Below the pieces are notes generated by a model that was not told the DNA's origin, did not search any database, and was given only the letters and a program-made list of their open reading frames with translations. Positions 4,749 to 8,740 of a stretch of 64,000 bases of DNA are shown here, piece after piece. The first letter of the stretch is position 1. Every line of letters starts with the position of its first letter. The stretch spans positions 1,230,330-1,294,329 of the forward strand of contig NW_003314283.1 of assembly GCF_000143415.4 (NCBI RefSeq). The letters run 5' to 3'. Both the position numbers and the translations under genes were made by a program. Origin of the DNA: Selaginella moellendorffii. Lineage: Eukaryota > Plantae > Lycopodiophyta.

Positions 4749-6148
4749 AACACCTTGTTAATTGTGACTTCTTACAAGCTTGCTTCTTAGGTATAATAAG
4801 CTGCACCAATGTAGACGCTATTCCTATTGATAAATCTACCTTATTCTAAAATAAAAACCCTCTCCATAAGATTTATTCATACAAAACCCTATATGTATTA
4901 TGCTTTCATGCATATTTACAGCACCTATCCTAACCCTAAAGAAGAGTGGCCACCCTGTGGTCTCCAATAGCAAGAGTGGGTTTTAGTGCCTCATACTCAA
5001 CTCTAAAGCAGCTGTGAGCAACAAAAGGATCATTGTAGGACGTTCCAAAGGTTGAGTTACAAATAGACCACCATATAAGCCTGGTTTATAAATAAAAACT
5101 TAGAAACAAAAAATATTTTATATCTCCATTTTAAAATAATTTGTTGCACTTTGCATGCACTTAGTTTGCTTAATAGTAGTGTTATTCTTATTATTAATCC
5201 AATTAATCAGATAGAAGTTTATAATTATAAAAAAACCATTAAATGGTAAAATATCCTAGAATATCCAAGCATATAATAGGTTTGAGACAAATTACAAGCA
5301 AATCAAAAAACTTCACATTAGCAATATTTTAACAAACTACTGAGACATATTTTAGGGTTTTAGCTATCCATGACATAAAAATCATTTTAGAGCTTCCCAC
5401 AAAGATAATATGTAGGGAAGAATTTCATCTCTCTTAATTTTTCTTTTAAAATTGATAATTTTCTAAAACCATTGGGATAGAAAAAATTTAAGAATTAGTA
5501 TTAAAGAATCCACAATAAAATCAGGTTTTCCTTATAAACTAGTAAATTGCTAAATATTGGATTGAGTCTCATCAGTAGAATCTTTATGCCTCTTCCATGT
5601 TGGCTGTTTGTATGTATTTATGTAATGCCTTTTTGAAAGGTTCCTGTTTGCCGTTTAACACAAGCTCAAAGCGGTGCGTGGATCATTACAAAAGCATCTC
5701 TAGGTAGATGCACAAGCGGTTAGGGGTAGAACCGATGATCAAATAGATCCATACTTAGTGAACTCATCTACTCATCCAAGCCTGAGTTATAGTACAGTCC
5801 ATACAACCAGGAAGCTTGATATTCCTAAAGAAAGAAATGGAACAGTTCTCAATTTGAAGTTACGACTATTTCATTTGATGGCCACACATACGATTACACA
5901 AAACAAGGTGAAAGAAAATCACGAAACAACGATGAAACTAGAAACCTGTTAGCTTCCTTCTTCAGTCTAGACTGCTTGATTTTTAGAAGCTCCAATTCAC
6001 ATGGTTATTACGTTCCCGCAACCAAATCCATCCTGCAAGGAAGAGGACAACATCAAAAAATCAATCTCTCGCGCTCGCATACCTGGATGAGTGTTGTCGA
6101 CGATGCAGAGTTTGGCGTACTGCCGTGAAGCCGAGCGGAGACAAATTC

Positions 6149-7462
6149 CTAGTCCGAGTCGTCGTACACGCCCTCGTCGTCGGAGATCTCATCGAAGGTC
6201 CTCATGTCCAGCTGGTAGCGCAAGATCCCTCCGATCCCTCCAAAGCCCCGGCAAAACTGCGACCCCTCCTGGGACTTGTTGGTGATGAACTCGAGCGTGC
6301 ACCCAAACCGCCGGTACTCGTTCGCAAACCACTCGAGCAGCGCGATCTTGTCCTGCACCTCCAGCTCCGCCTGCGTCTCCGGGTCCCGGAAGTGCGACTG
6401 GTCCGACTCGTGCTCCTTGCTCAGGTGCTTGATGATGATCTCCCCGCTCACCGAGTGCTTGAGCGTGTAGCGCGTCACCTCCAGCGCCTCCCACACGATG
6501 AGCGTCTCCACCGCCCCCATCTCCAGCGCCTTGAGCGTGTCATCGATGCCAAACACGTACTTGCCCGTGTCCTGGCTGATCTCCTCAAAGTACTTGCCAA
6601 TCAGCCGCTTCTCCTGGATGAACTTGACGTTGGACAGGATCTCGGCCGAGAGCTCGATCGCCTGGTTGAACCCATTCTCCCCGCCGTAGGAAACGTCCAC
6701 CACGTTGAGCACCTTGGTCTGGAGCCGTGGATCAAACATGTCCGACTGCCCGAGCTCCGTCTTGAAGTCCGCCGACCCCGCGAGGATGAGCCCGGCAACG
6801 TTGGGCTGGCTCGTCACCGGGTTGACGAAGAACTGCGTCGCTAGCTCCGCGGTCTTCCTCACGTAGTTGTGCCTCTTCTCCATCCGGAGCCTCGCGAAAC
6901 GCAGCGCCGACTGCCCTCCACGGCCGTGCTTCTTGGGCAGATCCACCGTGAACTTGTGGAGAACCTCGCGAGTGTTGCCGCTGAGCGTGCCAAAGAGGGT
7001 CCCGTTTCCATCCATGATGATGAAGCCGAACTTCTCGTCGGACTCCAGGAGCTCGTTGAGCGCCTCGGTGTGGAACTTGTTGTCGCAGAGGTAGAGCGAC
7101 GCGTTGATGGGCTTGAAAGGCTCGAAGTCGATGGTCACCTTCTTCTCCTTGCCGTCCTCGGTGACGATGGTGCCCGTGTAGAGCACCAGGCCATTGGGCG
7201 GCACCTTGTTGTAGAGCTTGAGGCGCTGCTGGGCGGAGGTGATGGCGCCGAGCACCGACTGGCGATTCACGCGGTTCTTGATGTTGGAGGCCGTGCCGAA
7301 TTCGTCGCCAAGCATCTTCTGGACGCGATTGACCTGGTCGCGCGGCGGCATGATGAGCGAGATCATGCTGGTGCCGTTGCCCCTCGCGGATTCCAGCGCC
7401 TTGATCAGCTTCTTGATCTTCCATATCTCGATGTTCTTGTCGGTCTCAGCGCCGTCCGCCAT
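6149..7462 (-). CDS. eRF1: Eukaryotic peptide chain release factor subunit 1 (intronless CDS; predicted 5'UTR intron 7465-7521 and 3'UTR intron 6033-6082)
   Basis: [33 protein letters not shown] (NIKS loop), YLCDNKF and GGQ motif; ATG at 7462. Confidence 0.98.
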
Positions 7463-7570
7463 CCCTGGCAAGGAGAGAGGAGCGATGGATCAGAGAATGG
7501 AATCGAGAATACGCGTCTTACCGCTCGACCGCGCTCCGCTGCTGGACGCCACACTGCCCACCGCCAGAGA

Positions 7571-7579
7571 AAACCCTAA
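7571..7579. promoter_or_regulatory. Telo-box AAACCCTAA upstream of eRF1 (similar boxes near 8749, 45699, 49693)
   Basis: Exact motif; telo-boxes are typical of plant translation-machinery promoters. Confidence 0.6.
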
Positions 7580-7599
7580 CCCTACGAGGAGGATGAGGG

Positions 7600-8740
7600 G
7601 CGAATATCCACCGGCATCTTCCAAGAGTTTGTTTGAGCTTTGGCCTCTCGGAAATTCTCGAGCGCCTCGCGGACACGTCTCAAGCTGGGAAAAGAAAGTC
7701 ACGATCAGCGCATTCTTCCACTCACACTGGACGACGATCACTCGAGAAAATCGGAGGAGAGATTTCATACTTACTTTGATACGCTTGACCACTTCTCGAG
7801 CAGGCGATCGGCTTCCAGGAACTTTAGCGGCGAATCGGCCAAGCCCAAGACGAGAGCTTTCCAGTCTTGTCGCTGGAAGAGCTCCTCCGCGAGATCTAGA
7901 CCCGGTTGTTCCACTGCGGCGTGGACGAAGTCGGAGAGATCTTGTTTGAGCTGCTTTGGATCCAATCGCCAGGCTTGCAATCTGGGAGGAGCGATGGTGT
8001 CAATCCAGCTTACTTGGAAAGTTGGAATGGACTGACCTGGAGGATGGAGCGAGCTTGGAGTAGAGGTTTTCCTCGCGGAGGATGTCCAGTAGCTCGATGA
8101 TTCTTCCAGTGGCAGCGTCGCTGGACGATCCGGGATTTTTTACGTAGAGCATGCACGACGATGGTGTCTTGAGCTTGCAGCGAGGAATGTCCGTGGCCAC
8201 CTTGAGCACGGCCTCGATGAGAGGAAGAGCTTGGTCACCTGAGAGAGAAGGAAAGAAGCTTATAAGAACACGAAGAACACGAACGATTCCATAGGAAGCT
8301 GGCATACCTTGTCCATTCCTGACGAATCCTTTGCAAGTCTCGGCGAGCTTCTCCAGGCACGACATGGAAATGCAGGATCCATATTCCACTCGCTCTTGCG
8401 ATACAGCGAGATTATCGTCGAGATTCTTGCCCTGGCATCTGTCCATCTCTGGAATCCCCTGTCCCACGCAGCCGGGCCGAGAATCGCCGTGGAATTTTGC
8501 CGATGAGAGAATGGACACCAGCGCTTCGATGGAGAATGCCGTCGTTCTTGGATAGAGCTGCGAGGAATGGATCCATTACCGCATTGCAAGAATCACAGGC
8601 AAACTTACAACGGCGGCAGTAAATCCCATCATTCCCAGCGCCCGATCGACCAGCGGCGATCGAGCCTGGCACGACAGCGCGCCGGGAAATGGATCGGCGG
8701 AAGGCGAGGCGCGCGACACAAGCTCTTCCAGTTGTTGCAT
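7600..8740 (-). CDS. Multi-exon uncharacterised helical plant protein (3' end uncertain)
   Basis: ATG at 8740 (MQQLEELVSRAS..); GT-AG introns link ORFs 8000-8518 and 7771-7980; WRLDPKQLKQDLSD..EELFQRQDWKALVLGLADSPLKFLE looks like conserved coding sequence. Confidence 0.55.

What the first reader, a model, noticed from the sequence alone, without database searches (positions are those of the whole stretch)
5997..6151. eRF1 3'UTR has readthrough/NMD autoregulatory geometry
Seen: the TAG (6151-6149) is followed by 22 stop-free codons (66 nt), then a canonical 50-nt intron (CAG|GTATGC..CCTTGCAG, 6082-6033), then 11 more sense codons before TGA. Known: an exon junction more than 50-55 nt past a stop triggers NMD, and angiosperm eRF1-1 is autoregulated by this RT-NMD layout. 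Inference: efficient termination destroys the mRNA, while readthrough under low eRF1 clears the junction complex and stabilises it, adding about 34 aa. The stop context is TAG-GAATTT, not CARYYA, so any readthrough signal would be non-canonical.
Basis: partly seen in the sequence, partly recalled or inferred. Interest (0 to 1): 0.75.

Follow-up and report, generated by a model that had tools for sequence, protein, structure and literature searches.

The report
Spikemoss eRF1 gene: spliced 3'UTR intron
The spikemoss gene for the protein that ends translation really has a small spliced intron just past its stop codon, a layout expected to expose its mRNA to nonsense-mediated decay, but nothing shows that the ribosome reads through this stop as it does in the flowering-plant version of the circuit.

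Summary
The canonical eRF1 gene of Selaginella moellendorffii (minus strand, single-exon CDS 7462-6152) ends at TAG 6151-6149. Then come 66 nt, a 50-nt GT..AG intron (6082-6033), 11 codons and TGA (5999-5997). Transcript contigs from three independent studies lack exactly these 50 nt. A fourth run retains them. Both haplotypes keep the layout.

The junction lies more than 50 nt after the stop, and the spliced 3'UTR is only about 246 nt. However, 66 nt falls between the distances tested in plants (28 nt inactive, 99 nt active).

The readthrough half is unsupported:
- The base after the stop is G, the change Nyikó et al. used as their non-readthrough control.
- No known readthrough motif, RNA structure or Rfam match follows the stop.
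- All three frames stay open for 29-37 codons, so the stop-free run is within chance (P about 0.13-0.25).

eRF1 of Marchantia, fern-like and moss-like transcripts, and seed plants has C after the stop. Marchantia shows a complete readthrough-plus-decay layout.

Best reading: a decay-only variant of the known plant eRF1 feedback, untested. Moderate interest.

The scan noted a divergent eRF1 paralog elsewhere in this genome, not this locus.

The parts
6152..7462 (-). eRF1 coding sequence, one exon, 437 codons (ATG at 7462-7460)
   Evidence: ORF; Pfam eRF1_1/2/3; identical to the S. moellendorffii protein on GL377587.1
6149..6151 (-). Main stop codon TAG, followed by GAATTT (+4 = G); preceded by GAC (-2 A, -1 C)
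   Evidence: Sequence; same in the other haplotype
6083..6148 (-). First 3'UTR exon segment: 66 nt, 22 stop-free codons in the eRF1 frame
   Evidence: no stable fold (z +0.48)
6033..6082 (-). 50-nt 3'UTR intron, GTATGC...CCTTGCAG
   Evidence: Skipped in contigs of X1, X4 and X6 (three studies); retained in one X15 contig
5853..6032 (-). Second 3'UTR exon up to where the transcript contigs end (5853 in two runs, 5881 in one). Holds 11 more in-frame codons and the next stop, TGA, at 5999-5997, 33 nt past the junction
   Evidence: The spliced 3'UTR is about 246 nt
7465..7521 (-). 57-nt intron in the 5' leader, ending 2 nt before the ATG
   Evidence: Joint in X1, X4, X6 and X15; GTAAGA...TTGCCAG
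7685..7774 (-). 90-nt intron in the 5' leader
   Evidence: Joint in X1 and X4; GTAAGT...TCCCAG
7582..7617 (-). Single upstream ORF in the spliced leader (ATG at 7617, 11 codons plus stop)
   Evidence: not analysed further

Best explanation
This is the canonical eRF1 gene of Selaginella moellendorffii. Its mRNA is normally spliced at a 50-nt intron whose exon junction lies 66 nt after an efficient-looking stop (UAG-G).

Inferred mechanism: a ribosome that terminates at UAG does not reach the exon-junction complex deposited about 20-24 nt upstream of the junction. The mRNA would therefore be a standing substrate of intron-type (EJC-type) nonsense-mediated decay. In plants, raising eRF1 makes NMD more intense even on reporters with ordinary stops. 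That alone would give negative feedback on eRF1 mRNA. This would be a decay-only version of the seed-plant readthrough-plus-decay circuit, with readthrough at background level only.

Shown here: gene identity, splicing, the distances, both haplotypes, and the absence of any recognisable readthrough signal.

Inferred only: NMD sensitivity and feedback.
For: - Splicing is seen in three studies.
- The junction is 66 nt past the stop, beyond the plant rule of more than 50 nt.
- The spliced 3'UTR is about 246 nt, so the intron is the only NMD-type feature.
- eRF1 overexpression lowers NMD reporters that have non-readthrough stops, and this depends on UPF1 (PMC5397192).
- A 3'UTR intron also sits in the eRF1 3'UTR of Marchantia polymorpha and of seed plants. 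An intron here is therefore unlikely to be a coincidence.
- Against readthrough: +4 is G, no structure follows the stop, no Rfam family matches, and all three frames are equally open.
Against: - No measurement of NMD sensitivity exists for this mRNA.
- In plants an intron 28 nt after the stop was inactive, one at 99 nt was active, and a ubiquitin intron at 80 nt had no effect. So 66 nt may be too close.
- This is the only canonical eRF1 locus found. A constitutively decay-targeted essential mRNA with no rescue route is an uncomfortable design.
- The transcript assembles readily in every RNA run, although contig depth cannot rank expression.
Confidence: 0.45

Rival explanations
1. The intron is functionally inert for mRNA stability. 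It would be an ordinary small 3'UTR intron, possibly a remnant of an older regulatory layout or a splicing-dependent expression enhancer, that sits too close to the stop to trigger decay.
For: - 66 nt lies in the untested interval for plants, and an intron at 80 nt had no effect in one study.
- The open frame is at chance level.
- No sequence or structure element is recognisable.
- Riccia sorocarpa and a Sphagnum paralog have plain stops (UAA-AGG, UAA-GUU) with short open frames, so the layout is not universal outside seed plants.
Against: 3'UTR introns are uncommon in plant genes (general knowledge, not measured here). Even so, eRF1 carries one in Selaginella, Marchantia and seed plants. The distance does exceed the 50-55 nt rule.
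Confidence: 0.33
2. One reading: low eRF1 lets ribosomes read through UAG by a non-canonical signal, cross the junction, strip the junction complex and stabilise the mRNA, adding 33 residues.
For: - The geometry allows it: the next stop is 33 nt past the junction.
- Low readthrough can already protect an mRNA from NMD (PMC5397192).
- Related lineages appear to use leaky stops in eRF1: UGA-CGG in Marchantia, UGA-CGC in fern-like transcripts and UGA-CUG in moss-like transcripts.
Against: - +4 G is the published non-readthrough control.
- No CARYYA, type II or type III signal is present.
- The downstream fold is no better than shuffles.
- The frame is not specifically open.
- Selaginella is the exception to the +4 C seen in Marchantia, the fern-like and moss-like transcripts, and seed plants.
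Confidence: 0.12
3. Regulation works through retention of the intron. The unspliced isoform has no downstream junction (3'UTR 296 nt) and escapes decay, so the splicing ratio, not readthrough, sets mRNA stability.
For: Run X15 assembled only an intron-retaining contig (6006-6814), while its 5' leader intron is spliced.
Against: This is one low-depth contig (6.7) in one run. It could be pre-mRNA or DNA carry-over. Three other studies assembled only the spliced form.
Confidence: 0.1

Closest known systems
Seed-plant eRF1-1 'intronic RT-NMD 3'UTR' autoregulatory circuit (Nyikó et al. 2017, PMC5397192)
   Same: Same gene family, with a single-exon CDS. A spliced 3'UTR intron lies more than 50 nt after the stop. 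The next in-frame stop is in a position that does not induce decay. The stop is TAG.
   Different: - The stop is followed by GAATTT, not the nearly invariant CAATCA. +4 is G rather than C, and -1 is C rather than A.
- The intron is 66 nt after the stop, against 130 nt in Arabidopsis.
- The next stop lies after the junction, not less than 25 nt before it.
- No second, canonical-3'UTR eRF1-2-like gene was found.
- There is no functional evidence.
Marchantia eRF1 3'UTR
   Same: Intronless eRF1 CDS and a spliced 3'UTR intron with a GTATGC donor.
   Different: Marchantia has UGA-CGG (the type II readthrough triplet) followed by 119 codons that are open in two species (P about 0.005 each). Its junction is 398 nt after the main stop and 38 nt after the next stop. 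Selaginella has none of these frame-specific signals.
Generic EJC-type NMD targets with 3'UTR introns in plants (Kertész et al. 2006, PMC1693880)
   Same: A spliced intron downstream of the termination codon, beyond the 50-55 nt limit.
   Different: The distance of 66 nt lies between the tested 28 nt (inactive) and 99 nt (active). UPF1 dependence was not tested.
Bacterial RF2 +1 frameshift autoregulation
   Same: A release-factor gene whose expression could sense termination efficiency.
   Different: RF2 needs the recoding event to make the protein. Here the normal product comes from ordinary termination, and no recoding signal is present.

Membership tests
eRF1-1-type intronic RT-NMD 3'UTR (Nyikó 2017) | Stop codon in a readthrough context (stop + CARYYA; CAATCA in almost all members) | tested here: not met
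   TAG GAATTT. +4 G is the paper's non-readthrough control.
eRF1-1-type intronic RT-NMD 3'UTR (Nyikó 2017) | [quoted passage not shown] | tested here: met
   66 nt; spliced in contigs of three studies.
eRF1-1-type intronic RT-NMD 3'UTR (Nyikó 2017) | Next in-frame stop in a position that does not induce NMD | tested here: met
   TGA lies 33 nt past the junction. This is expected by chance: only about 6 open codons are needed, P = 0.69, and all frames are open.
eRF1-1-type intronic RT-NMD 3'UTR (Nyikó 2017) | TAG stop with A at -1 and -2 | tested here: inconclusive
   TAG yes; -2 is A, -1 is C.
eRF1-1-type intronic RT-NMD 3'UTR (Nyikó 2017) | mRNA rises when NMD is blocked and falls when eRF1 is overexpressed | not testable with these tools
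   Needs a UPF1 dominant-negative or cycloheximide experiment and an eRF1 co-expression assay.
eRF1-1-type intronic RT-NMD 3'UTR (Nyikó 2017) | [quoted passage not shown] | tested here: inconclusive
   Only this locus and its allele appear among the close hits. Earlier scan notes report one very divergent paralog with an internal UGA; this was not checked here.
Plant readthrough signals type II / type III | Type II: UGA + CGG or CUA + hairpin about 8 nt downstream. Type III: UAG + G or purine-rich octamer + 3' structure | tested here: not met
   The stop is UAG, so type II is excluded. For type III, G at +4 is present, but GAAUUUGU is not purine-rich and the folds give z +0.48 and +1.02. Long-range pairing was not tested.
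EJC-type NMD substrate | Exon junction at least 50-55 nt downstream of the terminating stop in the mature mRNA | tested here: met
   66 nt. Plant experiments bracket this distance only at 28 and 99 nt.

The most novel reading that the evidence does not exclude
The eRF1 readthrough-plus-decay sensor may be older than seed plants. Marchantia has the whole layout, built on a type II UGA-CGG stop. Fern-like transcripts share UGA-CGC-YAU-GC followed by a hairpin. On this reading, Selaginella is a lineage that kept the decay-inducing intron on its only canonical eRF1 gene but replaced the leaky stop with a tight one. It would then run a decay-only feedback, perhaps with leaky-stop sensing moved to the divergent UGA-containing eRF1 paralog noted elsewhere in this genome.
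Probability: 0.2. Interest if true: 0.65.

Novelty: new variant of a known kind. Interest (0 to 1): 0.42.

Why it matters
eRF1 dosage sets how faithfully every stop codon in the cell is read. The only described eukaryotic feedback on it is the seed-plant readthrough-plus-decay 3'UTR. A lycophyte that keeps the decay intron without a leaky stop would show whether the two halves can be separated and which half came first. The Marchantia layout found alongside suggests the circuit may go back to early land plants, with a different readthrough motif. Both points can be tested directly with the published Nicotiana benthamiana reporter assays. If the intron proves inert, this is simply an ordinary 3'UTR intron.

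Tried and rejected
- **Other lycophytes.** Two protein searches, whole protein and residues 322-437, returned no other Selaginella or lycophyte eRF1.
- **Ceratopteris genome locus.** No DNA was served.
- **Supplement of Nyikó 2017.** Table S2 and Fig. S10, which discuss evolution across Plantae, are not held. I cannot tell whether Selaginella is already listed there.
- **Literature.** Searches for eRF1 with Marchantia or Selaginella plus readthrough or NMD found nothing relevant.
- **Rfam.** The scan of 5800-6250 gave no match.
- **RNA structure after the stop.** None beyond shuffles.
- **Haplotype comparison.** Too few differences to test selection: one SNP in the intron and one nonsynonymous SNP in the extension.
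- **Riccia sorocarpa.** Fetched to test whether the Marchantia layout is shared. It is not (UAA-AGG, 11 codons, no similarity).
- **Spliced sequences.** They were built only inside scripts, to count stops.

Full report
**What is there.** On the minus strand the window holds a single-exon ORF, 7462-6152, that ends at TAG 6151-6149. It carries the three eRF1 Pfam domains and is 85-92% identical to land-plant eRF1. The exact protein lies on Selaginella moellendorffii scaffold GL377587.1. An allele differing by one residue lies on GL377593.1, with the same allantoinase-like neighbour, so that is the second haplotype.

After the TAG come 22 sense codons (6148-6083), GTATGC...CCTTGCAG (6082-6033, 50 nt), 11 sense codons and TGA (5999-5997).

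**Is the intron real?** Yes. I laid Logan contigs of four runs from four studies on 5300-8300. Three of them (X1, X4, X6) join 6083 to 6032 with CT..AC ends on the + strand and run on to 5853 or 5881. The same contigs also lack two GT-AG introns in the 5' leader (7521-7465 and 7774-7685), so they derive from spliced RNA.

The spliced 3'UTR is about 246 nt. That is below the 350-400 nt at which plant 3'UTRs trigger decay by length, which leaves the intron as the only decay-type feature.

Run X15 (low depth, labelled as another organism but near-identical) has one contig, 6006-6814, that keeps the 50 nt although its 5' leader intron is spliced. This may be real retention, pre-mRNA or DNA carry-over. 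Both haplotypes keep the whole layout.

**Is the open frame meaningful?** No. After splicing, frames 0, +1 and +2 stay open for 33, 29 and 37 codons. Shuffles of the UTR give at least 22 open codons in 25% of trials and at least 33 in 13%. With the junction only 66 nt away, a readthrough ribosome needs only about six open codons to come within 50 nt of it, which happens in 69% of shuffles. So 'the next stop is in a harmless position' is nearly automatic here.

**The decay half.** The published plant rule is an intron more than 50 nt after the stop, and 66 nt meets it. The experimental bracket in plants is wide, however. An intron at 28 nt was inactive and one at 99 nt was active. The authors noted that a ubiquitin intron at 80 nt had no effect in another study. 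NMD competence is therefore plausible but not secure.

**The readthrough half.**
- The context is GAC UAG GAA UUU.
- The seed-plant eRF1-1 context is stop-CAAUCA, almost invariant, with A at -1 and -2.
- The authors' non-readthrough control was precisely +4 C changed to G.
- The three plant readthrough classes are UAG-CARYYA, UGA-CGG/CUA plus a hairpin about 8 nt downstream, and UAG plus G or a purine-rich octamer plus a 3' structure.
- Only the bare G of the third class is present. GAAUUUGU is not purine-rich.
- The 78 and 92 nt around and after the stop fold no better than dinucleotide shuffles (z +0.48 and +1.02).
- Rfam finds nothing.

**Comparison with other lineages.**

| Lineage (locus) | Stop and context | Open codons in eRF1 frame | Intron or structure evidence |
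|---|---|---|---|
| Selaginella moellendorffii (window) | UAG-GAA-UUU | 33 (spliced) | 50-nt intron, junction 66 nt after the stop; spliced in three studies |
| Marchantia polymorpha (L009; transcript L013) | UGA-CGG-CAG | 119 | 158-nt intron (GTATGC...TTTGCAG); junction 398 nt after the main stop and 38 nt after the next stop |
| Marchantia paleacea (L003) | UGA-CGG-CAG | 119 | GT donor at the same position; no transcript checked |
| Fern-like Logan transcripts (L014-L016) | UGA-CGC-YAU-GC | 36, 40, 70 | Predicted hairpins 15-20 nt downstream (only L016 beats shuffles, z -1.9); introns cannot be seen from transcripts alone |
| Moss-like transcripts, three peat-bog metatranscriptome contigs plus one Logan contig (L004-L007) | UGA-CUG | 44 (42 in L006) | 6-nt CTACAG difference exactly 50 nt after the stop, which looks like a tandem acceptor; unverified |
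| Riccia sorocarpa (L017) | UAA-AGG | 11 | No similarity to the Marchantia 3' region |
| Sphagnum magellanicum paralog with CDS introns (L008) | UAA-GUU | 21 | Not assessed |

For the two Marchantia species, the 119 open codons have P about 0.005 each under shuffling, while the other two frames hold 5-8 stops. The two extensions differ by 12% with no indel. Their dN/dS is 0.97, and their dS is 0.13 against 0.37 in the CDS. That is the full published geometry, and, as in Arabidopsis, the extension is kept open rather than conserved as protein.

A leaky-looking stop followed by C thus recurs in liverwort, moss-like, fern-like and seed-plant eRF1, but it is not universal. Selaginella's UAG-G departs from it. 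This raises the prior that the Selaginella 3'UTR intron belongs to an old regulatory architecture. It lowers the probability that readthrough operates at this particular stop.

**Most likely mechanism.** Nyikó et al. showed that overexpressed eRF1 lowers NMD reporters that have ordinary stops, in a UPF1-dependent way. An eRF1 mRNA that is an intron-type NMD substrate would therefore be under negative feedback without any programmed readthrough.

| Reading | Probability |
|---|---|
| Decay-only variant of the known feedback | 0.45 |
| Inert intron | 0.33 |
| Full readthrough-plus-decay model | 0.12 |
| Intron-retention switch | 0.10 |

Nothing beyond anatomy and splicing is shown. Decay sensitivity and feedback are inference.

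**Novelty and limits.** The main text of PMC5397192 claims the circuit for seed plants and defers evolution within Plantae to a supplementary figure that I could not read. Selaginella may already be tabulated there. No searchable paper links eRF1 readthrough or NMD to Selaginella or Marchantia. No other lycophyte sequence could be retrieved. Earlier notes of this scan describe a divergent eRF1 paralog with an internal UGA elsewhere in this genome. I did not test them, and they concern other DNA.

Noticed in passing
L009:4312-4871 (Marchantia polymorpha KZ772797.1), L013 (Logan transcript), L003:3812-4230 (M. paleacea): Marchantia eRF1 has a complete readthrough-plus-decay layout. The stop is UGA-CGG-CAG, followed by 119 codons open in both species (P about 0.005 each; other frames hold 5-8 stops; dN/dS 0.97; no indels). 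The next stop, TAA, lies 38 nt before a transcript-verified 158-nt 3'UTR intron that sits 398 nt after the main stop. An old gene model (P0137, 506 aa) even fused this extension to the CDS. No searchable paper reports this.
   Followed up: partly
L014:1358-1446, L015:1375-1463, L016:1471-1559 (Logan transcripts that group with ferns in the tree): Three fern-like eRF1 transcripts share the stop context UGA-CGC-YAU-GC. A GC-rich hairpin is predicted 15-20 nt downstream, with AGGCCACCAGGGAGCAC shared by two of them; only the L016 fold beats shuffles (z -1.9). Frame 0 stays open for 36, 40 and 70 codons, longer than the other frames in two of the three. This looks like a type II-like leaky stop. 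Introns cannot be seen without genomes.
   Followed up: partly
L004-L007 (three peat-bog metatranscriptome contigs and one Logan contig, protein P0021): A moss-like eRF1 mRNA with UGA-CUG, 44 open codons and a 3'UTR of 717 to over 1000 nt. L006 lacks six bases (CTACAG) exactly 50 nt after the stop, which looks like a tandem splice acceptor and so an exon junction there.
   Followed up: no
window 7775-8240 (minus strand): In run X4 one contig joins the eRF1 5' leader to exons of the upstream gene (7775-7981 and 8037-8240, intron 7982-8036). In X1 the eRF1 contig stops at 7886 and the upstream exons sit on a separate contig with far lower depth. This could be read-through transcription, overlapping ends or an assembly merge.
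   Followed up: no
window 7582-7617 (minus strand): A single 11-codon upstream ORF (MPVDIRPSSSS) lies in the spliced eRF1 5' leader, which itself holds two introns. This could be a further translational or decay input.
   Followed up: no
L008:4001-8565 (Sphagnum magellanicum CM038918.1): This Sphagnum eRF1 paralog has at least five introns inside the CDS. The eRF1 genes of Selaginella and Marchantia are intronless in the CDS. Its stop context is UAA-GUU.
   Followed up: no
window 5964 and 5966: Run X6 carries the haplotype-B letters at these two 3'UTR positions (matching GL377593.1). Both alleles are therefore expressed and spliced at the 3'UTR intron.
   Followed up: partly
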